Source: Magallana gigas
Lineage: Eukaryota
Length of the DNA stretch: 64,000 nt
Assembly: GCF_963853765.1 (NCBI RefSeq)
Contig: NC_088858.1
Location: 39,866,001 to 39,930,000, forward strand
Direction: 5' to 3'
The translations under genes and the position numbers were made by a program. Shown here piece by piece: positions 1 through 50,586 of the stretch. Position 1 is the stretch's first letter. Each line of letters opens with the position of its first letter. The notes below the pieces were generated by a model. It was not told where the DNA came from, made no database searches, and was given only the letters and a program-made list of their open reading frames with translations.

Positions 1-619
1 ATACAAGTACAAGTACTTTTTTGTTGAGGCACATTACAGGCTTAATCATTTATTTTACTTATTTCGTTTATTAGGCAATGATGTCGTGTTACACGGAGAT
101 GGGGTTCAGTTTAACTTGGATCATTCTTTACCTCACTAACCAGTCGGCGAGTCAACATCGAGAGCTGCTTTCAGTATTGTTTGCTTTCCACAACAACATA
201 GCTTGTAGATTTGTATTATACAAATGTATAGAGACAACGAATAAAGAAATATTTTTACAATTACATATTAAGATTTGTGCAATCCATTTTCGTAAATGCT
301 CTTATTCATAGCTATTAAAACTAAATAAGGCAAAGAAAAACTATTGTATCATCGCCTGTAACAAACACGAATAAGCGCAGAAAGGACCAGGACAGTCGGC
401 CATGACAGTTTTATGGTCCAATCTCCATGATCTGGTTAGCGGAACTCGGACAGCAATGCGTCGTTACAAATAGAGCTGACAAGTCGTGTTTTTGACTAAT
501 TGTTAATCCATACGCGAACAATAAAAACATGTTCAATTGTGTGAGTTTCTTCGTTGATAGCGACAAACATCGCACGGGCAAATACACGGCGTGTGCTTTT
601 TTCCCCTCCTGTTTGAACG

Positions 620-3600
620 ATGTATGCAGTTGTGTTTTGTCTTGCATTTTTTGGACTAGTGCAGGGAATTCAACATAGAGATATTTTGGATCTTTACAAA
701 TATAGATACCATGGGAATGTAAGTGATTAATTTTTCGTCTTGTTCATTTTCAAAAATCATTCATCGTACGAATTCAAAATGATTCTGATGGGTGTATACC
801 AAACCGCCAGTTGCTGTGTTGACTCTGTCTAGGTTTTAAAAAAGATTCATAGTTGATTTCTAATCAATTTTATGTTTATCTTCAATTTTTGTCGTATCTA
901 TAGTTGCTATTTAAAATGATTTTTTTTTAAATCTAATATTTTGAATTTAGAAACGAAATGTTTCCAAAATTACAAAACAATATGAATAAACTTTATGGAT
1001 ATCAAAGTATTGAAAATATGTTTATACAGTAATATCCTATCAAAAAAAATATAATTGTTTTACACATTTTATCAATTGTTGATCGAAAAAATAATGATGC
1101 ATAAATGATAAAAATATATCTTGTATTATATACAAGTAGAATCCTATCGTATTGACTATGAAAAGAACAAAACCTACATTTTAAGCAAATCAACAGCATT
1201 TTCAAGAATCTATAACAAAATTTATGATCTTTCAAACAAATTCATCAGTCGTCTCTGCAATATGAATATGCATAAATCAACACTACTATCAAAATCCAAA
1301 TTAACAACAAAAGTAGATCCAACATTATCAATGCAAAACACAACACAAACTTTACAATCATTTACATCAAACTTAAATACCAGGTGGCGTTATAAAATTA
1401 AATCTAAGCATTCGACTAACATTGGAAGACTCCAAACAAATCTGTCAAGCGAGTACTTCAGACGGAAGCCATTCGAGGCACATCAGAGGCATGTTCCTGT
1501 TTACACTTGGCGATAAATAGTGATCATGGCCAAGAATACATAAAAACATCATGCATGCATAGAACATTTAGGATAGACCAGTGATGAAGCTGTGTTTGAT
1601 TTATTAACTACAAAATTTAAGTCATTTTTAAAGAGAGGCAACTCTACTAGCCAACAGTCGAGGAAACTAAGAGCATTTTTGGGAGTCTTGGTTACAGACA
1701 ACCCCACCCCCTTTGGATATATCACGACAAATATTTTTAAAATATTTTATCCCCTCCTTCTTAACAGAATGAGGAGGATTTTTATTTTTTTTTGGGGGGG
1801 GGGGGTTGTAACGCTGTACACCCCCCTTTTGTTTTGTATTGATGTTTGTTTGTTTGTTAAAGGGGCATGGTCACGATTTTGGTCAAATTTTATTTTTCTG
1901 TTTTTATTATTTGCAATACTTTTTGAATGCATTTCTAATGATCAAATGAAATTTGGGTGCCAGTCGTTGAGTTTTAAGCAAGATACAGGGCTTACAATTC
2001 TTCGTCATGTAAACAAGGCTCATGCCCTGTTTTTGTTTACATAGGCTCAAAATCCAGTAAAAAATCTTTTTTAAGCTGGTTTGTGTATCTTATAAATAAA
2101 CAGTTCCTAACGATTATCACATTTATTTTAGGTCTAAAACTGGAATTTTCACTTCAACGTTCAAAATGTAAACAAACGCTTTGTTTACATAACGAAGGAT
2201 TGTAAGCTCTGTAACTCGCTTATAACTCATCAAATGACACTCAAATTTTGGTTGCCTATTAAAATGCCTTACTAAAGCATTGTAAACATTAAAATCGTAA
2301 AAAAAAATGTTGACCAAAATCGTGACCATGTCCCTTTAAGACTATTTAGCATATTTGTTTATTTTGTTGTTATTTGTTTAAGATACTTAACGTTATTAGC
2401 ATGTATATTAATATTGCAGATAATTACGTTTGTTTTATATTCAGAGCCATATATAATGGGGGTTTTTATGAATTGTGAATTAAAAATAGAATTGTTTTAG
2501 AAAAATATACGTATTTTAGTCCTTTCGGTTGTCCATAGGTACTGCAATAACTCGCATCGACTTTTTCCAAATATTTTAAAGATAACCTAGATTTTCATTT
2601 CTGTTTAGGGTATATTTTTTGAAGCTACGCACGGAGGAACGTGTAGCTACGACCCCCCGAGCATGCCCCCCGTGGCCCGGTACATAGACAGGACCATCGC
2701 CATCAACCCCCGCCAGTTCTACCGGGGATACGCGTGTGGTGTTTGCTTTAGGGTACGATTTTTAAGATAAAAAATACCATCTTTTTCATGTATTTGTTTT
2801 CAAAGAACATATGTACAGATATTTTCATAACAAAAGTAGATAGTATTCTTTTTTTATCAGTTCATTTGATATTATTTGCAAAATTTATGAAGTATCTTTA
2901 AAAAGAAATTTTCGAAATATGATGCCTAAACATAGGTTTGGGTCTATGTTTTATGAAGCAATCAAGTAATATATGTGGAAGCATGTTCTTAAGTTTAAAG
3001 CATCAGTTTTGTGATGAGACAAACATTTTTGACAGAAATTCTTTGTTCACTCGACGGTTTTGTAGATAGCAACGCAAGTAGTTTATTCAAGAACAGTGTA
3101 CGCTTATATTTCTTGTATAGAAGACACAGTGAAATGAACACTGTATGTATTATTTACAAAAGTGTGTTTTAAACACCTGTACTAAGTGATACGAATGGAT
3201 TAAATTTTATGAACTTTATAAACTGGTCATGGTTCACTCAATTTTTCTATATTATGCGATAAAGATTAATTTTAGGTAAACATAGCTGGCAAATCTAATG
3301 GTGGGGCTCAAGTCGATGAGACATTTACCGTATTTGTTAAAGACTACTGTCCAAATTGTATGCCAGGTAAGGTGGAGCCAAAATCAAGCATGAAACGAAT
3401 CCTTCTTTGCGCGAGTATGCATTACAATAAAATAAATATATAAATGTCTACATCTTAAAAGATTTTATAAAAATGTTAAAAAGTGCAACATTTCCAATAA
3501 TTAAATGTTACATCTGGTATTTGGTGTGAGGAAATATTGTTTTATAAATCAGTGAATTTGATTTATATGTATGAAAATATACATGTATGTATATTGCATA

Positions 3601-4323
3601 TTTTACCTTAAGGGATACCCCTTTTAACGGATGACGTTGATGGAAGAATGTGGATGGAAATGCAGGCAATACAGTGCCCAGTAGGAAATACAACACTGGA
3701 GTACAAATTTCAGGGCAGCGGTCCTTACTATATAAAGCTTCAAGTCAGAAATGCAAGGTAAATCTTTGGGATTTTTCGATATTGTACAACAGCTGAATAC
3801 AAAATTCCTTTGTAAATTTAATTAACACTGCACATATTTGTGAGGAGTAGTAATTGTTATATTAACTAAGTTAATCGTCTGAATATATATAGAATTCCTC
3901 CAACAAAAGTAGAAATATATCAACCGAAGTGGCGACAGTGGACACCCTTGGCTCACACCACTGATGGCTTTTGGACATTTGGTACAGAACCTGTTGAAAG
4001 ACCAGTAAAACCACCTTTCCGAATTCGTTTGACTGCAGCAAATGGAGAAAGAATAGTTGACAGTGTTCCCGATTTAGGTAAGCATACCATATTAATCAGC
4101 AAACATATGAACTAACTATTAATGTATCGGCCAATAAACTTAAAAATAGGTCCTAATCATGCATTGATATTTTTGCTATTTGTTTTAATTTTTTTAATGC
4201 ATCATTTATTTGTTTCTGGCAATTATTTATACTATTTAGTGTTTCATTTTTATTTCAGTCAACGGAGTTGTAATGCAAGGTGATGGAAAACAATTTAAAT
4301 TTGATCCAAACTTACCAAAATAG
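620..4323 (+). CDS. Secreted expansin-like protein (EXLX/YoaJ-type: DPBB domain + CBM63-like domain), 6 exons, 242 aa
   Basis: Exons 620-718, 2609-2752, 3276-3366, 3613-3757, 3893-4077, 4259-4323. All introns are GT-AG, phases match and the total is 729 nt. Signal peptide MYAVVFCLAFFGLVQG. Expansin motifs: GGTCSYD, AINPRQFYRGYACGVCFRV, VKDYCPNC, QAIQCPVG, FQGSGPYYIKLQVRN, PFRIRLTAANGE. Confidence 0.92.
1861..2335. mobile_element. Non-autonomous TIR element (Kolobok-like MITE) in expansin intron 1
   Basis: TIR AGGGGCATGGTCACGATTTTGGTCAA ... TTGACCAAAATCGTGACCATGTCCCT, flanked by TTAA at 1857-1860 and 2336-2339. Related copy at ~19335-19809 and an end fragment at ~46600-46638. Kolobok assignment is inferred from the TTAA TSD and RR..YY ends. 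Confidence 0.85.
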
Positions 4324-5159
4324 ATTACCAGAAAAAGAGATACAGCACCGAGTTTGGAAAGTGAAAATTGTCTACTTCTATGTTCATCAAATATCCATTG
4401 TTACTTTACATTAAATTTACTGAACTATTCATATATTAAAAATCTAAAAGGCATACATGTGTACGTCGTTTGACTATGCATAAGTTTAAAAATGGGCACT
4501 TGTAAGAAATATATGCATGGTTACTTTTATTTTTATTTAATGCTCGACAAATACTAATAATTGTGTTTGCAAGGACTAAAATGTTTCAGCATATATGTAC
4601 AAAGAACACATACGCTGCTTTGATATCGCACAACTTATAGCGTTTTAAATAACTCCTAACATACTAATGAAAATTCGAACTTGAAGTGCCATTTTGCGAA
4701 ATGGCGAAATATATCTATTTATTATATCAAAACTTGAAATATGAATAAAGTATGAGTCAGCTGACAAATTCTTTATCTTGATATTAAAAGATTATAAAAA
4801 AAGTATTTACCGTTAGCACCTGACAAGTTTGCAATAAGGAAGGATTTTAGGCTCGAGTATAGTTTCTTTTTATGTAGTTGATTTTAATGTAAAACAATTT
4901 TTGTAAAAAAAATTCAGCCAGCCTTTATATCTTTTTACTGATTTAGATTTCCATTTTTATTCAACATCTACATGTAGCTGAAGTAAACTATTTTGAATTC
5001 ACACACCTCTTTGTCTATAATTGTTGTTTAGTGCAATTTTGTCATTAGATGAGTTTTATAATATATTACAAAAACACTCTATATTTGACAACTGCTTTGG
5101 AATTTTATTCCTCTACTAGCCGATTAACGTCATCATATGATATATAAGTACGTAACATT

Positions 5160-23534: not shown

Positions 23535-26500
23535 ATGAAAGTCTACGCAGCCTTATTAATTGTAGGTGTTTTTGGATTATTTATTTACTAGACTAAGTGC
23601 TTATTCATTTTATTTTAACGTTGGTCTTTATCGTTTATTTTTTTAACCTTGACAATCTTTAATTTTTTTAGAAATGTAATCTAACGTAATTTCATAGGTA
23701 ACCAACTTCAGGTTAAACTTATTTTTTGCTGGCAGGGTAGTTAAAAGTTAAAATATAAAATTAATACAAAATAATAAATCCACAGAAAAAAATTTACATT
23801 GATTGTTCTTTGAATTTCAGATAGCCTTTGGATCGGCCTTGACAACGTCTAGTCCCCTAAAAGGTAAGACCTGTCAGATTTATCGCTATTTGTCTAAAGG
23901 TATTAGCTTTCTAGATAACGATAATCCAAAATCATTACAAGATTGTGCTATCAGTTCAATATCCTTAAAAATCAATCGAAACAAATCGAAATAAGCCTGA
24001 CATTTTTGACTCGGAAATATTTTCATAACACCGAGATATAATACAGATTTCGTTATTCTCGATTGAAAAGAAACGCCACTGTTTCCAGTTATATCCGAGA
24101 GATTCATTAGGAAAAATATATCAAAAGAGACTAACATCAAAATGCAAGGACGAATTCATAATTAAACAAAAGCCAAAGAAAAATCCATATAAGCATGTAT
24201 TTTCGAACTGGTCATTTTGAAATCGTAGTATGGGTTAAAACGTAATTTTAAAAAAGAGAAAGAACGAAATAAGAATTCAAGTAAGCAAGCAACTTAGCGC
24301 AATTGTTCTTAAGACTTAAACTTTGATATATTATTCTATGTTATTCTAGATTTCGGTATAACAGAATGTCAAGACAGCATGGCAGATGTTGTCTTTGTCC
24401 TGGATTCCTCCGCTAGTATTTGGGAGCCTGATTTTAACAGACAGGTGGATTTTGTTAAGAACATCGTCAAGCAGTTCAAAATTGGACCAAACAACACGCA
24501 AGTAGGAATCGTAACATTTGGCCAATACAACACGCTTCGGTTTCATCTTAAGAAATACCATGACAGCGAAGAGCTACAGAGAGCTATTGGTTGGATCCGC
24601 TTCAAACCTGGTAGAACAACCAATACCGGAGGTGCTATCAAATATATGTCCAATGAAATGTTCTCAGAGAAAAATGGCGCCAGAGAAAATTTCCCTAAAG
24701 TAGCCGTTGTCATTACGGATGGAAAATCTACCGAGACGAAAAAAACCATCGAGGCCGCACGAGTTGCGCGTGAAATGGGGATTCATTTGTTTGCCATAGG
24801 TGTGGGAAAGAAATATGACAGAAATGAATTAGAAAAAATTGCCAACAAACCATCTGATGAATATGTTTTCACGGTTGACAACTACAGTGCTTTGAAAAAC
24901 ATCCTGAACGTATTTGCAGTCAAAACTTGCCAAGGTATGCTATAACCTACAGACTGTCTCCTATTTAGTCATTCTACATTAAATTTTGTGATTAATCAAT
25001 TATGTGGTTGTGAGTTTGTTCTGTAAGAATTGTTTCTTTTTCTTTCAGTGACAACAACACCGAAACCGACAACCACAACGACAATAGCCACAACAACCAC
25101 CACAGTACCTACCACTACCACCACAGAACCTACCACTACCACCACAGATCCTACCACTACCACCACAGAGCCTACAACTACCACTTTTTCTTACAGAATT
25201 GGGGAGCAGAGTGATCATCCCTTCGTTAAAGGTATGCTTCCTTAAATAGAATAGAATACTTTGCAAATGGTTTAAAGCATTTTCTCACGCTGTAAATAAT
25301 TCATATTTCTTCCTAATATTTACGTATGTGCTTTTGTTTATTTTCCAATAAAATCCTTTATTTTAGCATGCAATGGAAAACCAGCGGATGTGTACTTCGT
25401 AATGGACTCCTCAAGGAGCATCGGGTCCAGCAACTACCAGAAACAGAAGATGTTTGTCAGCAAACTCCTGAGTGCCTTTGACATTTCAAACTCCAACACT
25501 AGAATCGGGGTTGTGACGTACAGCAATGACGTCAAGGTTGACATTCCTCTTGGTTCTATCTCAACACTCCCGGAACTTCAGAAAGCTGTTAACAATCTCC
25601 CGTACCATGCAAGAGGTACCAACACGGGAGATGCCATACATTTCGTAAGAAAAGTCGGATTCGTCAAAGGCGTTGCTAGACCGGAAGTAGCCCATATAAT
25701 GATCGTTCTTACTGATGGCCTCTCGATGGATTCCGAGAAAACACGCAGAGAGTCTTCTCTGGCTCACGATGCTGGAATCTATGTGTTTGCCATTGGAATT
25801 GGCAAAGGGGTCGACACAGTAGAACTCGGTGCCATTGCCAGCAACCCGGACAAAAATTTCCTTTTCCATGTCGAGAATTTTGATGCCCTAAGTTCCATCA
25901 GAACACTGCTCGCCACAAGAACTTGTGAAGTGTTGCCAAAAGACGAAGCAGTTTCAACCAGTGGTAAGAATCTAAAAGCAAATTATATCGATGCATTTCA
26001 CTTGATAAGAATGTCCAATCCTCGTAATAGTTATTAAATCATATCAGTAGTAACTAATGATTTCTTTCTTCATTTCAGTTGTACCACTACCGAAATATGG
26101 ACTAATGGACATCGTTTTTGTTTACGATGTATTCGGAATTGGAGCCCAGAAGACTCTTATCATCAACAAATTCATCTCGTCCATCGTAAGAAGGATAACT
26201 ATTGGAATGGGAGACATCTGGGTTGGTCGTCTGATTGCGGATTGTCCGGATATGACGCAAAATGGTCTGGTTCCGGTAACATCCTGGAATGATAACTCCA
26301 AGATTACGTTCCCGGGACTAGGAAGCCTCATTGAGAAACTGGATGTCTTCTTTGACAGTAATGGCGGCCGATACAACGCGCGGCGTACAGTGGTTGTGTT
26401 TGTGGATGAGCAGGAACAGAACGTAATGGACGTGGTCTCCAAGCTCCACTCTCTCCAAAACATGAACGTCATCACCATCATCCTGGGGGAGGAGGAGAAA

Positions 26501-26614
26501 TACATCCTGGAGGAGACCAGCACCAGGAAGTATTTCTATGTTCCCAGTTACAACGAACTTCTCCAGTTCACGTTTCCGTGTTTGAAACAGCTTTGTTTCT
26601 GTGATTCCGTGTAA
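23535..26614 (+). CDS. Secreted triple von Willebrand A domain protein with Thr-rich linker (matrilin/collagen-VI-like matrix protein), 6 exons, 656 aa
   Basis: Exons 23535-23561, 23821-23863, 24350-24934, 25049-25231, 25367-25963, 26079-26614 (GT-AG, 1971 nt, in frame). Signal MKVYAALLIIAFGSA. vWA1 DVVFVLDSSAS, vWA2 DVYFVMDSSRS, vWA3 DIVFVYDVFG (degenerate). PTTTTTE repeats in exon 4. Confidence 0.93.
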
Positions 26615-30558: not shown

Positions 30559-31936
30559 ATGGAATCAAAAGTTCAGCAACGTTCAAAGGAATGGTTTCAA
30601 ATTCGTAAATCTGTGTTCCTAACATCATCAAAGTTTGGAGATGCTCTTGGTGTTGGGATGGGAAAGCCGTATGATTTCTTTCTCTCTCTAATTTCTGAAG
30701 ATACTGACGAAGAGGAGGAGGAAGAGGAAGAAGTAGAGTCCTCCAATACAAAGCATGGACTTACTATGGAGGAGATCATCCTGGAATGCTATCAATTGCT
30801 GACAGGACACAAAACCCGCGATTCTGGGTTTTGGATGTCTAAAGACAGGATTCTTCAAGATTTGATTGGAACTTCTCCCGATGCCGTTGTTGTTGATGAC
30901 GAAAATAAAGACATTGGACTTTGTGAATTCAAGGCGCCCATTTTTAGAATGTACAAGAAAGAAAATTCAGTACATGGTAATATTTTAAATGTATTAGTGA
31001 AATCTTCTTGTTATAGTGTAGTATTACTTGAGATTCATTTTGCATTATTTTATTTATAAAGGTATTCCAAGACACTACATGGCCCAAATTCAAGGACAGC
31101 TTGCCATAACTGGATTACCGTGGTGCAATTTTTTAGCTGTGTGTAAAAATACTAAAGAAATAATGCTTAAGAAAGTGTATTTTCATTCAGAGTACTGGGA
31201 CAATGTAGTGAAAATTCTCAAGCAGTTTTGTTATGCTCTTCAGGTAAGTAGCCGGATTCCCTGGCACCAGCATTCTTCAGGTCAATATTCAGTCTCAAGT
31301 CTGCGATTAGCACATGTATTTCTATTTCGGTTTTGAGTTGAGATGAACTGAGGGATTTGAATGTGTTGGTGACAGTGGAACCTGTCATGATATTGTAAAT
31401 TCAAAAACATAGATCCAATTCCTCATCACAATGCAACACAAAGAGAGAAATAATATGTAAACTTGGTAATTTGAATCTAGGTATCACTATAGTATTAGCT
31501 CAGCAACATAACGTGAACCTTTGTTTTACTGCAGTGTTTTACTGTTAATAATTACAAATGTACATATACTGGGAGTAATCCTTTTTTGTAGGATGCAAAA
31601 TTAAGAAAAGAATTGGGATATGACCCGTTGGATTTTGAAGGAGCAAGAAAACTACAAACTTGGCCGGTACAGATTGATTACCTGCCAGGCGAGCTGTCAA
31701 TTCAAGTTGAAGATATTCTCCAAATAGATAAACGTGGCCGATTTAGTGGACCATCCAGAGTTTGGTTGTCGTTTGACTTCCTTGTTGGACAGTCATATTC
31801 TTTACCCCAAAGGTTAAAAGGATATGCAGACAAGATGATTCTGGATGTGGATGAACAAATTAGTTGTAAAAAAAGGAAGACTGAAGAAGGAGAAGGAAAC
31901 AGTCAAAAGACATTTACATCCAATGGACATTCATGA
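30559..31936 (+). CDS. YqaJ-like viral recombinase / lambda-exonuclease family (PD-(D/E)xK) protein, 3 exons, 314 aa
   Basis: Exons 30559-30976, 31062-31243, 31592-31936 (GT-AG, 945 nt). Motifs QRSKEWFQIR..LTSSKFG, HG..mE, GTSPDAVV, LCEFKAP, HYMAQIQGQLAITG..WCNF. AATAAA at ~32083. Confidence 0.92.
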
Positions 31937-47085: not shown

Positions 47086-50000
47086 TTAACAATCAGTCAC
47101 AACCAAAAACATTGCTCCATTTTCATCATAACTGGTTTCCAATTTTCCAGTTTGGTTCATGGTTTCCGGTTCACTTTCGCTGCAGGCATCACTGGAACAT
47201 CTTTCTGCATTGTCGATTTCTATTTCAAATTTTTCTTGATTAGCCTTCTTTAACTTCCCCTTTAAACCGATTAGTGTGTCCTTGTGCTTCTCCATATGTT
47301 TTTTAAGATAATACTTTCTGGAAAATGTACTGTTGCATAAATGGCAAACATGCGGTTTTCTCCCTATGTGAGTAGCCAAATGACGAATATAATCTGACTT
47401 GAATGCAAATATTTTGTTGCAGATTTCACAGTGATGTGGCTGGCCTCCATTGTGCTGGAATCTGTGAATAGAGTACTCCCTCCTTGCACTAAAAGAAAGA
47501 TTACACTCCTTACAGTAGAATTTACCATTTACCATTTTCTGTCCATCTTCTGTGTAAAGCGTTTCCTCTCTTTTCTTTGAATTACTTGCTTGACTATTTG
47601 ACTCTGTAAGACTTTTCACAACTGCATTGACATCAGGCTCCAGTTTATCTGCTGGACTATCCACAGATTTTAAAAATGAAAGTCTCTCCTCATAGCTATG
47701 CAAACTCATATGATCATTCAGTGCATTGGGACGTTTAAAAGATTTCCCACAAATCCTACAGGTGTGTGGCTTTAAGGTGGAGTGGGCTGCTTCATGCCTC
47801 ACAAGGTCTGACTTACAAGAAAACAACTTCTTACAGGTTTTACAGGAATGTGGACTTTCACCACGATGTTCCATCTTGTGAATTCTATACTTGGTCACCT
47901 GCTCAAAGCTTTCACTGCAAATACTGCAAACATATTTTCTACATAGAGGTGAACTGAAAGAGGCTTTGTCTGATTGAAGAGATATACTAGTAGACATTTT
48001 CTGGAATAGGATGTCTGTGTTTTCCTCTTCTTCTTTTGCATTCTGTCTTGGGGGATGGCTAGTTTTTCTCACTCTGTTGCCAGACTTTTCTCCTACAGTT
48101 TTCTTTACTGGTTGAGGATCTTCTCTCGATACTGGGGTACAGACAAATCCTAACTTTTCCTCTTCTTCCTCATGTCGGACCATGTGCGTCAAAAATCTAC
48201 GTCTGGTATGAAATCCTTTCCCACACATTTGACACTTATGGGGATAGTGGCCAGTATGGATCCGAACATGCTCTTTTAAATTGGATGGGCGATTAAAAGC
48301 CTTATCACAAAATTCACATTTATGTTTTCGACGGTACTTGTCCCATGGAACATTTTCTGGTTTTAGGATGAGCAATTTCTTACTCTGTGAAGCTGATATT
48401 ACTCGCTGCCCAAAGTGCAGAGCCTTATGAACATTATAGTCTTCTGTACTCTGAAATGCAGCATCACAAATATGGCATGTAAGTATTTCTTTGCAAATAA
48501 GACATCTATCTCCGCTAGAGCTAGTTTGCTTGGATTCTGCAAGATTTGTAAACTCTTTGGACTGTGTTTGTGAGCTTGTATCTTCATCAGTTGATGGATA
48601 GCATTCCTTTTCTAAGACAGGTGGGGCATCATGATTCTCGTCACTGTAGTCATCATAATTGGAATCATTCACTTCCTTCTTTGGTGATAATACTGGAGGT
48701 AATCTGTCCGTTTCTGACTCTATTACCTCCTGTTTAATAATTGGTACCGATTGGTCAGTCACATCCCTCATTTCATTATCAGGTTTTCCAAACATGTGAC
48801 TGTCATCGTATTCAGGATAACACACCTCTTTTTTGACGGACAAAGTTTTAGAAGAATTCCTTGATTCTTCATTTTCTACATTTGTCAGTGAATCCACTTG
48901 TACTTTTTCACATTTTGGTTTAGAAACTGACTTTATCATAGAGCTTCCTTGCATAATACGAGTCAATGCATTTTCGACATTTGAGGCAAAATCTTCTGGG
49001 ACATCCCCATACTCTGAATCACAAATCTCCTCTTTTATTGATTTCTCTGTGGGATTTTCTACTGTATTTTCTACATCTGAAAAAGGAATTGATGAAACAT
49101 CTCCATAGTCTGGATCAAGGACCTCTTGCTTGACGACAAAATAGTTTGGTGTTTCAACTCTACCAGATTTCTGTATACCACACCTCTCAATACTTTCGCG
49201 CTCAACAGAATGATGTTCGGGGTTGCTGTCTTCTTTTTCGATGAACTTATCGAAGTAGTTCTTTTCATCCCGGGAGACAATGTCTGGTTCCATTTCATTA
49301 CTAGTATCATAATCCAATGCAGAATTTAAGAAAAATTCATCATAGAAATCAGATTCCATTTCATCTTTCTTCATGGGTCGCCTTCTTTTATTTGGTTTTG
49401 AAACATTGGACTCTTTACTGTTTAGTCTCCTTTTCAAAATCTTTTTGTCATTAGCAGAAGTATCAGACTTTTCACATGATGTGTTCGGTTTACTAGAACA
49501 TTCTCCATTTTTGTCGTCAATAGACATTGCTGAAGAGAAAGTTTTGCCATTAAGTAATGAAATCAAAGTAGCGGACTTTTTAGTGTTGGTCGGTTTGGGT
49601 GTCAAATATCTTTCAATTTCGTGCGACTGAACTAATCGAGGCTTAAATCCTTTAGAAAGAGGAGCTTGGTTTAACATGTTTAACAAAGATACCGAGTAGA
49701 TCTTCTTCTTGTTTAGAGCTTTCTTCTCATCAGATGACGGAGTACTCCCTAACACAGATTTACCATGAAGCTCCTCTGCCTGGCTTTGTTGCATGGTGAT
49801 CTGGGGTTGCTGAGAGTTTTGCTGTTTGCTTGCTAATATAACTAAAGAACTCAGGTCTGAGTCCAAATTCACTATAGGCAATATAATGTCTTTCATCTTA
49901 GAAATTGATGCTGATGAAACTGAAGTATCACATGATGAAGAACCTGCATTGCCTATTTTTTTCAGAATAGACACCCAAGATTTTGTTTTTTCTGGTTCAT

Positions 50001-50586
50001 CTTTTATTTTGGTTTCGCTGCTCTGTGAGGAACAATTTGATTTTTTAGTAGAAACATCAGCAAATTCTTTTTCAATCATAGTATTTCCATTTCCTTTATC
50101 CATTTCATCAGCCAAAATTTCTTCTTTACAACTGTCTGCTCCACTCTCTGCAATTTTATCTTCTCTAGAACAAGTCTTTTCTGATCCATGCTTAACTGCC
50201 TGCAACTCTTGGTCTGAACCAGCAATACTTGAAACACATTTCTCTGACAATACATTTTGATTATGGGGAATAAGCTCTTGTTGATCCAATTCCTTCTTTA
50301 TTTCAGTGGAGGTGGTTTCCATCTTTCCATTTTCATTTTCTTTCTTTGGCAATTTACTAGTATTTGGCTTGTTGAGGATAGATACTAGTTTAGATCCACC
50401 TTTATTTGTAGTCTGTATAGATGATCCATTTTCATTCGTTAATGAATCCAGCTCAGTTTCTTGTTTTATTTGAAGTCCAGCACCAACTCTAAATGAGTTG
50501 TCTGCCCACTGTATCTTAATCTTGCTGTTCTTCGCTGGATCACCTAGGATTACTGTCTTTGGAAAATCATCATCATCTTCCATCAT
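47086..50586 (-). CDS. C2H2 zinc-finger protein, 1166 aa, nine fingers in three clusters of three; single coding exon
   Basis: Nine CxxC-x12-HxxxH fingers (e.g. KCEFCDKAFNRPSNLKEHVRIHTG, TCRICGKSFKRPNALNDHMSLH, VCHLCNSTFSRKYYLKKHMEKH). Long acidic disordered N-terminus. A splice acceptor at ~50614 indicates an upstream UTR exon. Confidence 0.95.
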   Translation of the reverse strand: MMEDDDDFPKTVILGDPAKNSKIKIQWADNSFRVGAGLQIKQETELDSLTNENGSSIQTTNKGGSKLVSILNKPNTSKLPKKENENGKMETTSTEIKKELDQQELIPHNQNVLSEKCVSSIAGSDQELQAVKHGSEKTCSREDKIAESGADSCKEEILADEMDKGNGNTMIEKEFADVSTKKSNCSSQSSETKIKDEPEKTKSWVSILKKIGNAGSSSCDTSVSSASISKMKDIILPIVNLDSDLSSLVILASKQQNSQQPQITMQQSQAEELHGKSVLGSTPSSDEKKALNKKKIYSVSLLNMLNQAPLSKGFKPRLVQSHEIERYLTPKPTNTKKSATLISLLNGKTFSSAMSIDDKNGECSSKPNTSCEKSDTSANDKKILKRRLNSKESNVSKPNKRRRPMKKDEMESDFYDEFFLNSALDYDTSNEMEPDIVSRDEKNYFDKFIEKEDSNPEHHSVERESIERCGIQKSGRVETPNYFVVKQEVLDPDYGDVSSIPFSDVENTVENPTEKSIKEEICDSEYGDVPEDFASNVENALTRIMQGSSMIKSVSKPKCEKVQVDSLTNVENEESRNSSKTLSVKKEVCYPEYDDSHMFGKPDNEMRDVTDQSVPIIKQEVIESETDRLPPVLSPKKEVNDSNYDDYSDENHDAPPVLEKECYPSTDEDTSSQTQSKEFTNLAESKQTSSSGDRCLICKEILTCHICDAAFQSTEDYNVHKALHFGQRVISASQSKKLLILKPENVPWDKYRRKHKCEFCDKAFNRPSNLKEHVRIHTGHYPHKCQMCGKGFHTRRRFLTHMVRHEEEEEKLGFVCTPVSREDPQPVKKTVGEKSGNRVRKTSHPPRQNAKEEEENTDILFQKMSTSISLQSDKASFSSPLCRKYVCSICSESFEQVTKYRIHKMEHRGESPHSCKTCKKLFSCKSDLVRHEAAHSTLKPHTCRICGKSFKRPNALNDHMSLHSYEERLSFLKSVDSPADKLEPDVNAVVKSLTESNSQASNSKKREETLYTEDGQKMVNGKFYCKECNLSFSARREYSIHRFQHNGGQPHHCEICNKIFAFKSDYIRHLATHIGRKPHVCHLCNSTFSRKYYLKKHMEKHKDTLIGLKGKLKKANQEKFEIEIDNAERCSSDACSESEPETMNQTGKLETSYDENGAMFLVVTDC

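What the first reader, a model, noticed from the sequence alone, without database searches (positions are those of the whole stretch)
620..4323. Intron-containing, two-domain expansin-like gene in an animal
Seen: a secreted 242-aa DPBB + CBM63-type protein with five canonical introns, so it is genomic rather than bacterial contamination. The domain 2 surface aromatics are kept (GSGPYY aligns with GSNRWW of Bacillus EXLX1). Established: expansins loosen cellulose or cell walls non-hydrolytically and are typical of plants, bacteria, fungi, oomycetes and amoebozoa; in animals they are best known from plant-parasitic nematodes. Inference: an old horizontal acquisition used by a filter feeder on algal walls, or on its own mucus or matrix. 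Predicted homologues may already exist in mollusc annotations (not checked).
Basis: partly seen in the sequence, partly recalled or inferred. Interest (0 to 1): 0.7.

Follow-up and report, generated by a model that had tools for sequence, protein, structure and literature searches.

The report
Oyster expansin-like gene, key Asp lost
This is a real, spliced and expressed Pacific oyster gene for a secreted two-domain expansin-like protein; the gene is already annotated, belongs to a mollusc-wide family that shares introns with green-algal relatives, and this copy has lost the aspartate that bacterial expansins need to loosen cellulose walls.

Summary
Window 620-4323 (+) holds six exons and five GT..AG introns encoding a 242-aa secreted protein. 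It is identical to RefSeq XP_011442024.3 of Magallana (Crassostrea) gigas, LOC105338541, named "uncharacterized protein". Public RNA-type contigs carry exactly this spliced form, and a DNA run covers the introns. An AlphaFold model (pLDDT 89) matches only expansins over both domains.

The find is not new as a gene. Homologues are annotated as "expansin-YoaJ-like" across bivalves, gastropods and a chiton, and a 2019 preprint mentions bivalve expansins as unconfirmed.

- All five intron positions and phases are identical in oyster, abalone and chiton.
- Three of them coincide in column and phase with introns of a green-algal homologue. This argues against direct bacterial import.
- The window gene is the downstream member of a tandem pair conserved in the three oyster genera examined (tandem order shown in Magallana, Ostrea and Saccostrea). 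The last exon of the upstream canonical "expansin-YoaJ" gene lies at 75-139.
- The window copy has replaced the family-invariant equivalents of Thr12 and Asp82 of Bacillus EXLX1 (I35, L115). It is nevertheless under purifying selection (dN/dS about 0.1).

It most likely binds polysaccharide through domain 2 with an altered or lost loosening function. Tissue and substrate are untested.

The parts
75..139 (+). Last exon (exon 6) and stop codon of the upstream canonical paralogue, 'expansin-YoaJ' LOC105338530 (XP_011442014.2)
   Evidence: Translating 77-139 gives the 20 C-terminal residues plus stop of P0132. The window starts at L012 position 12763, and the overlapping 10,139 bases are 100% identical to the M. 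gigas chromosome record.
240..245 (+). AATAAA, candidate polyadenylation signal of the upstream paralogue
   Evidence: Pattern search. Its role is inferred from position only.
366..619 (+). 5' UTR of the window gene (minimum extent; one contig reaches 314)
   Evidence: L001 aligns from 366. The X1 contig starts at 390 and an X5 contig covers 314-583.
620..718 (+). Exon 1: start codon, signal peptide (aa 1-16, 620-667) and N-terminal helix; followed by a phase-0 intron
1857..2339 (.). Foldback or MITE-like repeat inside intron 1 (long inverted arms), very high copy number in the genome
   Evidence: Inverted arms at 1857-1934/2262-2339 and 1933-2019/2178-2264. Summed contig depth is up to about 4.8e5 here against about 38 in the flanks in a DNA run.
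2609..2752 (+). Exon 2: start of domain 1. Codon 35 (2612-2614) is Ile where the family has the equivalent of Thr12 of Bacillus EXLX1.
3276..3366 (+). Exon 3: domain 1, ending in the CPNC motif; followed by a phase-1 intron shared with the green alga Elliptochloris
3613..3757 (+). Exon 4: end of domain 1 and start of domain 2. Codon 115 (3621-3623) is Leu where all 74 aligned relatives outside this oyster clade have Asp (Asp82 equivalent). Y150-Y151 (3726-3731) are the W125/W126 equivalents. The following phase-2 intron is shared with two green algae.
3893..4077 (+). Exon 5: core of domain 2 (Expansin_C / CBM63-like)
   Evidence: The exon alone hits Pfam Expansin_C at E=9e-4, and also hits Phl p 2 and maize EXPB1.
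4259..4323 (+). Exon 6: C-terminus and stop codon
4324..4770 (+). 3' UTR, with AATAAA at 4744-4749
   Evidence: L001 aligns to 4679. RNA-type depth continues into the 4679-4800 bin. AATAAA found. The exact 3' end was not determined.

Best explanation
Identity (shown). Window 620-4323 is gene LOC105338541 of the Pacific oyster Magallana gigas. It is a six-exon nuclear gene, transcribed and spliced as modelled. It encodes a secreted protein of about 226 mature residues with six cysteines. The protein has the two-domain expansin architecture: D1 is a double-psi beta-barrel and D2 is a CBM63-like beta-sandwich. It is of the microbial EXLX type.

Family history (shown, origin inferred). The gene belongs to a single mollusc clade found in bivalves, gastropods and a chiton. 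The five introns of that clade were already fixed before these classes split. Three of the introns sit at the same codon and phase as introns of homologues in trebouxiophyte green algae. The mollusc gene therefore shares an intron-bearing eukaryotic ancestor with those algal genes and was not taken directly from a bacterium.

Tandem pair (shown). In oysters the gene was duplicated in tandem. The upstream copy keeps the family consensus. The window copy is the downstream, fast-evolved one. Seven of its eight clade-specific changes at conserved positions lie in D1. They include Thr to Ile at the Thr12 position and Asp to Leu at the Asp82 position of Bacillus EXLX1. The conserved D2 residues and the two stacked aromatics (Y150, Y151) are kept, and the gene is under purifying selection.

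Mechanism (inferred). The protein is secreted and binds a beta-glucan-type polysaccharide surface (cellulose, possibly chitin) through D2. It does not perform the canonical Asp-dependent loosening step. It would act as a binding or targeting partner, or as a functionally shifted paralogue, beside the canonical expansin and the oyster's own cellulases. The most plausible setting is the processing of ingested algal walls.
For: - Gene model and identity.
- Spliced transcripts in two runs and unspliced DNA in another.
- Animal genomic context (C2H2 zinc finger and VWA exons in the window, a host repeat in intron 1).
- Fold: AlphaFold pLDDT 89.4 and pTM 0.85. The twelve best Foldseek PDB hits are all expansins covering both domains, with target TM 0.62-0.80 (0.74-0.80 for the microbial ones).
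- Sequence: the family profile against PDB gives 2e-39 to Streptomyces EXLX1 and 4.5e-30 to B. subtilis YoaJ. NCBIfam expansin_EXLX1 matches at 2e-15 over positions 5-190 of 194.
- Mollusc-wide family. Mollusc monophyly is supported at 99/99.
- Intron mapping by exact spliced translation: identical columns and phases in three oyster genes (the window gene, its O. edulis orthologue and the S. echinata canonical gene), abalone and chiton. Three are shared with Elliptochloris and two with [Myrmecia]. The chance of three or more coincidences is about 2e-6.
- Tandem pair in O. edulis, S. echinata and M. gigas.
- Substitutions: T35 and D115 are 99-100% conserved in the 74 other relatives aligned there but are I/M and L/A in the oyster clade.
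- Selection: dN/dS is 0.07-0.10 in the divergent clade against 0.06 in the canonical one.
- Literature: D82N/A abolishes creep in BsEXLX1, Thr12-Asp82 form a conserved hydrogen bond, and W125/W126/Y157 bind cellohexaose (PMC5072189).
Against: - No biochemical or tissue data exist for any mollusc expansin in the paper library searched. Substrate and physiological role are therefore inference.
- Pfam domain scores are all below the gathering thresholds, and the NCBIfam score is below its cut-off.
- The third aromatic of the Bacillus platform (Y157) aligns with Asp in this family.
- dS between oyster genera is saturated (1.1-1.7), so the dN/dS values are rough.
- The sister group of the mollusc clade is unresolved (83/46 support). 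No plant, fungal or amoebozoan expansins could be added to the tree.
- An expansin with Leu at the Asp82 position also exists in a bacterium (Stigmatella; PMC5072189), and its activity is unknown. Loss of Asp does not by itself prove loss of all activity.
Confidence: 0.8

Rival explanations
1. The window protein is still a working expansin. Another acidic residue in the remodelled loop (T-D-D-V-D-G, D118/D119/D121) or a changed groove takes over the role of the lost Asp, so it loosens cellulose or another polysaccharide non-hydrolytically.
For: Strong purifying selection and expression show that some function is kept. The loop carries one more Asp (D119) than the canonical paralogue. The review cited argues that an electronegative influence, rather than one fixed residue, may matter.
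Against: The Asp is invariant in the 74 other family members aligned at that column, bacterial-like ones included, and its hydrogen-bond partner Thr is replaced at the same time. D82N/A mutants of BsEXLX1 are inactive in creep. The model is least confident exactly at residues 31-40 and 111-120.
Confidence: 0.25
2. The mollusc family was acquired directly from a bacterium, as proposed for nematode wall-degrading genes. All five introns were gained later in the mollusc lineage.
For: The closest solved structures and the NCBIfam hit are bacterial EXLX1 proteins. NCBI names the genes after B. subtilis YoaJ.
Against: Three of five introns coincide in column and phase with introns of green-algal homologues, with chance about 2e-6. 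Molluscs group with eukaryotic and giant-virus-like sequences that share an 8-residue deletion after the Asp motif and a Gly-rich insertion. The bacterial-like sequences are separated from them by a 100/100 branch.
Confidence: 0.08
3. The gene is inherited vertically from an early eukaryotic or metazoan ancestor and was lost in most animal lineages. No horizontal transfer into molluscs occurred.
For: Intron positions shared between animals and green algae are what ancient vertical genes often show. A cnidarian 'Expansin-YoaJ' gene and a tunicate expansin are mentioned in papers. A bdelloid rotifer homologue exists.
Against: Three database searches returned only molluscs and one rotifer among named animals. 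The rotifer gene does not share the mollusc introns. The tree mixes algae, probable giant viruses, protists and the rotifer without following species relationships. The searches are limited by word index and by length, so absence is weakly shown.
Confidence: 0.15
4. The protein does not serve digestion. It binds non-cellulosic glycans for another purpose, for example chitin in shell or mucus matrices, or microbial walls in immunity.
For: Nothing here ties it to the gut. The neighbouring genes are secreted peptides and VWA-domain exons, not cellulases. JGI names relatives 'peptidoglycan-binding protein'. An anemone homologue is up-regulated in the adhesive pedal disc.
Against: In one probable giant-virus contig the homologue sits next to two GH5 cellulases, which links the family to cellulose. 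The D2 stacking aromatics that bind cellulose in BsEXLX1 are kept.
Confidence: 0.3
5. The locus is bacterial or algal contamination, or a decaying pseudogene copy.
For: None found.
Against: It lies on a 56.9-Mb chromosome record with 100% identity to the window. It has spliceosomal introns carrying an oyster high-copy repeat. Spliced transcripts are present. The frame is intact in three genera, with dN/dS about 0.1.
Confidence: 0.01

Closest known systems
Bacterial expansins of the EXLX1 type (B. subtilis YoaJ/EXLX1, PDB 2bh0/3d30; Streptomyces Ss_EXLX1, 9ms5; Clavibacter, 4jcw)
   Same: Same two-domain fold and domain order, about 200 mature residues, secreted. The D2 Trp-Trp stacking pair is conserved as Tyr-Tyr. 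The family consensus keeps the Thr12 and Asp82 equivalents. These are the best sequence and structure matches.
   Different: About 20-24% identity and below the NCBIfam cut-off. The mollusc/algal clade has six D1 cysteines, an 8-residue deletion after the Asp motif and a Gly-rich insertion. The window copy has Ile and Leu at the Thr12 and Asp82 positions. The gene carries five spliceosomal introns.
The canonical oyster paralogue 'expansin-YoaJ' (LOC105338530, XP_011442014.2) and its mollusc orthologues
   Same: Immediately upstream on the same strand, with the same six-exon structure and phases, the same length and the same cysteines. Identity is about 54% to the canonical copy of S. echinata.
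   Different: The canonical copy keeps G-D-G-T-Y-Y-G, the L-D-L motif and G-D-G-R-W. The window copy differs at eight positions that are at least 80% conserved in the family, and it sits on a long stem branch of 0.9 substitutions per site.
Plant expansin-like families EXLA and EXLB
   Same: Two-domain expansin-fold proteins (the model matched cotton EXLA1, PDB 7xc8). From general knowledge, not tested here, they lack the HFD Asp motif and have no demonstrated creep activity.
   Different: This is an analogy only. The oyster gene is of the microbial EXLX type: the family profile scores 1e-12 to maize EXPB1 against 1e-39 to a bacterial EXLX. Its loss of the Asp arose independently within oysters.
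Expansin-like proteins of plant-parasitic nematodes
   Same: Animal-encoded and secreted, and thought to be of foreign origin.
   Different: According to the preprint read, their domain order is reversed relative to canonical expansins. They were not compared by sequence here.
Green-algal EXLX-type homologues (Elliptochloris bilobata, [Myrmecia] bisecta)
   Same: They share the same indels. Identity is 26-30% to the window protein and about 41% (Elliptochloris) to canonical mollusc proteins. Three (Elliptochloris) or two ([Myrmecia]) introns lie at the same column and phase.
   Different: The algal genes keep the Thr and Asp, have additional introns of their own, and have about 54-59% GC and short introns.

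Membership tests
Expansin superfamily (D1 DPBB + D2 CBM63-like) | Two tightly packed domains, an N-terminal double-psi beta-barrel and a C-terminal beta-sandwich, in that order | tested here: met
   AlphaFold model with pLDDT 89.4 and pTM 0.85. The twelve best Foldseek hits are expansins aligned over 213-247 columns, with target TM up to 0.80.
Expansin superfamily (D1 DPBB + D2 CBM63-like) | Detectable sequence homology to known expansins across both domains | tested here: met
   phmmer against PDB gives 7e-06 to 1e-04 to four expansins. The family profile gives 2e-39 and 4.5e-30. NCBIfam NF041144 matches at 2e-15 over positions 5-190 of 194.
Expansin superfamily (D1 DPBB + D2 CBM63-like) | Scores above the curated Pfam thresholds for DPBB_1 / EXPB1_D1 and Expansin_C | tested here: not met
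   Scores of 13.5-16.2 bits against cut-offs of 24.6-28.8. The same holds for the canonical mollusc relatives tested, so it reflects divergence of the whole clade.
Expansin superfamily (D1 DPBB + D2 CBM63-like) | Secretory signal peptide | tested here: met
   Residues 2-15 have a mean hydropathy of 2.1, followed by V-Q-G then I-Q. No dedicated predictor was available.
Expansin superfamily (D1 DPBB + D2 CBM63-like) | Conserved D1 groove pair Thr12/Asp82 (BsEXLX1 numbering; the Asp of the plant HFD motif), required for creep activity | tested here: not met
   The window protein has I35 and L115. The 74 other relatives aligned there have Thr (99%) and Asp (100%). Equivalence comes from the profile alignment to 2bh0. 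The functional role comes from PMC5072189.
Expansin superfamily (D1 DPBB + D2 CBM63-like) | Linear aromatic platform on D2 (W125, W126, Y157 in BsEXLX1) | tested here: inconclusive
   Y150-Y151 align with W125-W126. Y157 aligns with D184, with F186-W187 two residues away. Model coordinates could not be inspected.
Expansin superfamily (D1 DPBB + D2 CBM63-like) | Non-hydrolytic loosening of cellulosic walls | not testable with these tools
   Needs recombinant protein and creep or paper-weakening assays.
Bacterial EXLX1 subfamily (NCBIfam NF041144) | Score of at least 100 bits against the subfamily model | tested here: not met
   56.6 bits for the window protein and 80.7 for the canonical paralogue, against 241.8 for a bacterial-like relative. 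The tree separates the bacterial-like sequences by a 100/100 branch.
GH45 endoglucanase | Single catalytic DPBB domain that matches GH45 structures | tested here: not met
   No GH45 structure is among the 50 Foldseek hits listed, and none has E<=0.001. A D2 domain is present.
Mollusc expansin-YoaJ-like clade | Five introns at fixed positions and phases (0, 0, 1, 2, 1) and placement inside the mollusc clade | tested here: met
   Identical alignment columns in the window gene, two further oyster genes (O. edulis divergent, S. echinata canonical), abalone and chiton. Mollusc clade at 99/99, with the window gene in a 100/100 oyster subclade.

The most novel reading that the evidence does not exclude
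The mollusc expansin family entered the mollusc stem lineage, before chitons and conchiferans split, as a piece of intron-bearing genomic DNA from another eukaryote. The donor was a green alga or a relative of one, which would be a food organism. Three donor introns have survived for more than half a billion years. Oysters later duplicated the gene and converted one copy into an Asp-less, functionally shifted expansin-like protein.
Probability: 0.4. Interest if true: 0.75.

Novelty: new member of a known kind. Interest (0 to 1): 0.55.

Why it matters
A 2019 preprint on expansin distribution left open whether the expansins annotated in marine bivalves are real cellular genes or contamination. 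This locus settles the question for the oyster: the gene is chromosomal, spliced and expressed.

The family is then a clean case of a wall-loosening protein type fixed in a major animal phylum. The intron positions shared with green-algal genes make the route of acquisition testable, that is eukaryote to eukaryote rather than bacterium to animal.

The tandem pair offers a natural experiment on expansin mechanism. One copy has the Thr/Asp pair and the other lacks it, and both are under selection. Expansin mechanism is still unresolved. The pair may also bear on how filter feeders process algal cellulose, and on enzyme cocktails for biomass.

Tried and rejected
- Single exons against Pfam and PDB: only exon 5 gave a weak Expansin_C hit. 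Its Kelch hits came from a short repeat-like motif summed over repeats and were discarded.
A reference was obtained by searching exon 5 against the representative library and then walking to full-length relatives and the exact RefSeq protein.
- A paralogue elsewhere in the window: tblastn found none. The 21-residue last exon of the upstream paralogue was recognised only after the chromosome locus was fetched.
- Rfam over the window: nothing.
- Raw-read RNA run X20: no exon coverage at a 1% sample, so uninformative.
- Tissue of expression: run identities are coded. A paper search for the SRA run and for the gene and protein accessions found nothing.
- Our-findings search for 'expansin': nothing.
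Three single-protein scans of viral contigs found no relatives. The giant-virus link therefore rests only on the gene context of two contigs and an Atlas cluster.
- Positions of the plant expansin introns A, C, B, F and H could not be extracted from the papers' text, so no comparison with plant introns was made.
- Contamination and pseudogene readings were rejected (see the rival explanations).
Full report
**Observation**

I rebuilt the gene from the raw sequence. Exons 620-718, 2609-2752, 3276-3366, 3613-3757, 3893-4077 and 4259-4323 on the + strand join into a 729-nt reading frame of 242 codons plus stop. All five introns begin with GT and end with AG. The exons have 44% GC against 29% in the introns and 34% in the window.

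The product is letter for letter P0119, RefSeq XP_011442024.3, 'uncharacterized protein' of Magallana (Crassostrea) gigas, LOC105338541. UniProt A0A8W8HUY3 calls a near-identical version (two residue differences) an 'Expansin-like EG45 domain-containing protein'. The first 10,139 bases of the window are 100% identical to chromosome record OY970750.1 of assembly GCA_963853765.1.

**Expression and splicing**

- A 1341-nt contig assembled from a public run (L001) encodes a 98.8% identical protein. It aligns to the window in six blocks whose edges are my exon edges, with UTRs from 366 to 4679.
- In the one read-laying run, a 1266-nt contig at k-mer depth 182 in run X1 and smaller contigs in run X5 carry all five joints, each GT..AG.
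- Run X15 behaves as genomic DNA. It covers the introns at about 35x and shows none of these joints.
- The run types are guesses by the tool, and the tissues are hidden. This shows transcription and correct splicing, but not where the gene is expressed.

**Genomic setting**

The window also holds a 1166-aa C2H2 zinc-finger ORF, VWA-domain exons, a YqaJ-type ORF and a DAO fragment. Intron 1 contains a 483-bp foldback element at 1857-2339, whose summed depth in the DNA run is about ten thousand times that of its flanks. Contamination is excluded.

**What the protein is**

Taken one at a time, the exons gave only a weak Expansin_C hit for exon 5. For the full-length protein:
- phmmer against PDB finds bacterial and plant expansins at 7e-06 to 1e-04.
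- A profile of 78 family members reaches 2e-39 (Streptomyces EXLX1) and 4.5e-30 (B. subtilis YoaJ/EXLX1). Maize EXPB1 reaches only about 1e-12.
- NCBIfam expansin_EXLX1 matches at 2e-15 over nearly its whole length, but below its cut-off.
- The Pfam domain hits are all below their gathering scores, as they are for the canonical mollusc relatives tested.
- An AlphaFold model built on the family alignment has pLDDT 89.4 and pTM 0.85. Its twelve best Foldseek matches in the PDB are all expansins, bacterial, fungal and plant, aligned over both domains with target TM up to 0.80.
- The N-terminus is a hydrophobic signal-like segment ending V-Q-G. The mature protein has 226 residues, six cysteines (all in D1), one N-x-T site and a calculated pI of 8.7.

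It is therefore a secreted two-domain expansin-fold protein of the microbial (EXLX) type.

**Distribution**

Two protein-database searches returned homologues in many bivalves (oysters, mussels, scallops, clams, a unionid, Dreissena), many gastropods (limpets, abalone, Pomacea, Littorina, pulmonates, whelks) and a chiton. Many are already named 'expansin-YoaJ-like'. A profile search added a bdelloid rotifer.

Outside animals, the named hits were two trebouxiophyte green algae. Unnamed hits include metatranscriptome proteins with Ser/Thr-rich tails and a C-terminal hydrophobic segment. Two further proteins lie on densely packed, apparently intronless contigs. One contig carries an mRNA-capping enzyme and an SNF2 helicase. 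The other carries XPG, AAA, DUF5754 and two GH5 cellulases. I read both as probable giant viruses, and a Nucleocytoviricota cluster also appeared in the Atlas search.

A preprint on expansin distribution states that expansins are annotated in several marine bivalves, but that it is unconfirmed whether they are cellular genes or contamination. I found no paper on a mollusc expansin's function, nor on these gene identifiers. Two side notes from papers:
- A sea-anemone 'Expansin-YoaJ' with an added chitin-binding domain is up-regulated in the pedal disc.
- An 'Expansin-YoaJ' transcript in a whelk egg-capsule study was assigned to Bacteria. Given the gastropod genes seen here, it may be the snail's own.

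**Introns and origin**

I mapped introns by requiring an exact spliced translation of each annotated protein from its genomic locus. In alignment columns, the window gene, its Ostrea edulis orthologue, the canonical Saccostrea echinata gene, an abalone gene and a chiton gene have all five introns at identical positions and phases (0, 0, 1, 2, 1). The gene structure therefore predates the split of chitons, gastropods and bivalves.

The Elliptochloris bilobata gene has five introns. Three fall at the same column and phase as mollusc introns 1, 3 and 4:
- intron 1, phase 0, between G-D/N and the residue that begins the T-Y-Y-G motif;
- intron 3, phase 1, in the Gly codon after C-P-x-C-x-x;
- intron 4, phase 2, in the Arg codon of N-x-R-I/V-P.

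The [Myrmecia] bisecta gene has three introns, two of them at mollusc positions 1 and 4. All junctions are GT..AG and lie in unambiguously aligned motifs. With about 690 codon-phase slots, three or more coincidences between two sets of five have a probability of about 2e-6. The figure is 2e-4 if only a fifth of the slots are permissive.

The rotifer gene does not share the mollusc introns. The mollusc and algal genes thus descend from one intron-bearing eukaryotic gene, which argues against a direct bacterial origin of the mollusc family.

Trees (79 rows quick, 42 rows careful) show:
- the molluscs as one clade (98 SH-aLRT; 99/99);
- the bacterial-like sequences separated by a 100/100 branch;
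- algae plus one virus-like sequence together (99/97);
- no resolved sister of the molluscs (83/46).

The eukaryotic and virus-like sequences also share an 8-residue deletion after the Asp motif and a Gly-rich insertion that the bacterial-like ones lack. Transfer between eukaryotes and very old vertical descent with many losses cannot be separated with the sequences I could obtain. The narrow animal distribution favours transfer.

**The tandem pair and the lost residues**

In O. edulis, S. echinata and M. gigas the gene lies directly downstream of a paralogue with the same exon structure. In the window, the last exon of that paralogue (LOC105338530, 'expansin-YoaJ') occupies 75-139, ending 481 bases before the ATG of the window gene. 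An AATAAA lies at 240.

The upstream copies carry the family consensus. The downstream copies (window, O. edulis, S. cucullata, S. echinata) form a 100/100 clade on a long stem of 0.9 substitutions per site. An AU test does not reject all oyster copies forming one clade (p = 0.38), which is consistent with a duplication in the oyster lineage.

Against the rest of the family, this clade differs at eight positions that are at least 80% conserved:

| Position | Family residue (frequency) | Oyster clade |
|---|---|---|
| 35 | T (99%) | I/M |
| 36 | Y (99%) | F |
| 73 | S (96%) | G |
| 84 | G (84%) | I/E/M |
| 115 | D (100%, 74 sequences) | L/A |
| 120 | G (89%) | V |
| 124 | W (92%) | M/L |
| 148 | N (81%) | G/S |

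Seven of the eight positions lie in D1; position 148 is in D2. Of the 13 D2-side positions (from residue 133) that are at least 90% conserved in the family, all are retained.

The profile alignment to B. subtilis EXLX1 shows that position 35 is Thr12, position 115 is Asp82, and Y150-Y151 are W125-W126. According to a review of bacterial expansins, D82N and D82A abolish creep activity, Thr12 and Asp82 form a hydrogen bond conserved also in GH45 and MltA, and W125/W126/Y157 stack on cellohexaose. The AlphaFold model is least confident in the blocks holding the two changed motifs.

The copy is not decaying. Pairwise dN/dS among the three genera is 0.07-0.10, against 0.06 for the canonical copy. 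Synonymous sites are saturated, so the values are rough.

**How it most likely works**

Shown: secretion signal, expansin fold, retained D2 core and stacking pair, loss of the D1 Thr/Asp pair, purifying selection, expression.

Inferred: the protein is secreted and binds a crystalline beta-glucan-type surface through D2. It lacks the Asp-dependent loosening step of canonical expansins. It would then act as a binding or targeting protein, a modulator of the neighbouring canonical expansin, or a protein with a shifted ligand. The most plausible setting is the handling of ingested algal walls together with the animal's own cellulases.

I put about 0.4 on 'binds but does not loosen in the canonical way' and about 0.25 on 'still loosens by an altered groove'. 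The remainder goes to other glycan-binding roles (matrix, mucus, immunity). The parallel with plant EXLA/EXLB, and with a bacterial expansin that has Leu at the same position, is an analogy and not membership.

**Verdict**

This copy, however, is the Asp-less paralogue, and the source looks eukaryotic.

The gene and the family are already in public annotation, so the novelty is that of a new, uncharacterised member of a known kind. Two observations are worth follow-up: the introns shared with green-algal homologues, and a conserved pair of canonical and Asp-less expansins in oysters.

Noticed in passing
window 75-139 (+), with AATAAA at 240-245: The last exon and stop codon of the upstream canonical 'expansin-YoaJ' gene (LOC105338530) lie at the very start of the window, only 481 bases before the ATG of the studied gene. 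The space between the two tandem genes is therefore extremely short.
   Followed up: yes
window 1857-2339 (intron 1): A foldback or MITE-like element with inverted arms of about 160 nt. In a DNA run its summed depth is about 4.6e5 against 38 for the flanks, and it is also abundant in RNA-type runs.
   Followed up: partly
window about 1948-2010; protein P0121 (UniProt K1RB98, 230 aa): The older UniProt model of this gene starts with 21 residues read from inside the intron-1 repeat and lacks the signal peptide. This looks like an annotation artefact that the current RefSeq model has superseded.
   Followed up: partly
L005 9939-10085 and 11215-11361 (Haliotis rufescens): The abalone gene has two tandem copies of exon 4 (98% and 100% identical to residues 112-160 of the annotated isoform). 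These are candidates for mutually exclusive splicing at the D1/D2 boundary.
   Followed up: no
L010 (ENA contig of 752,887 bp) and L011 (JGI contig of 35,645 bp): Expansin homologues of the same clade lie on dense, apparently intronless contigs. One contig has an mRNA-capping enzyme and an SNF2 helicase. The other has XPG, AAA, DUF5754 and two adjacent GH5 cellulases. Both are probably giant viruses, and such viruses are possible carriers of this gene between eukaryotes.
   Followed up: partly
L006/L007 (Didymodactylos carnosus assemblies): A bdelloid rotifer assembly carries a homologue (193 aa, probably truncated at the N-terminus) with two introns that do not match the mollusc positions. 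Whether the short contig is truly rotifer was not checked.
   Followed up: partly
window 47086-50586 (-), 24379-26614 (+), 30559-31059 (+), 62018-62560 (+): Other content of the window: a 1166-aa open frame with many C2H2 zinc fingers, three VWA-domain exon-like ORFs, a YqaJ-like recombinase ORF (possibly part of a mobile element) and a DAO-type oxidoreductase fragment.
   Followed up: no
paper PMC10913743 (Kellet's whelk perivitelline fluid): An 'Expansin-YoaJ (EXLX1)' transcript is listed there as bacterial. Gastropods carry their own intron-bearing genes of this family, so the assignment may be wrong.
   Followed up: no
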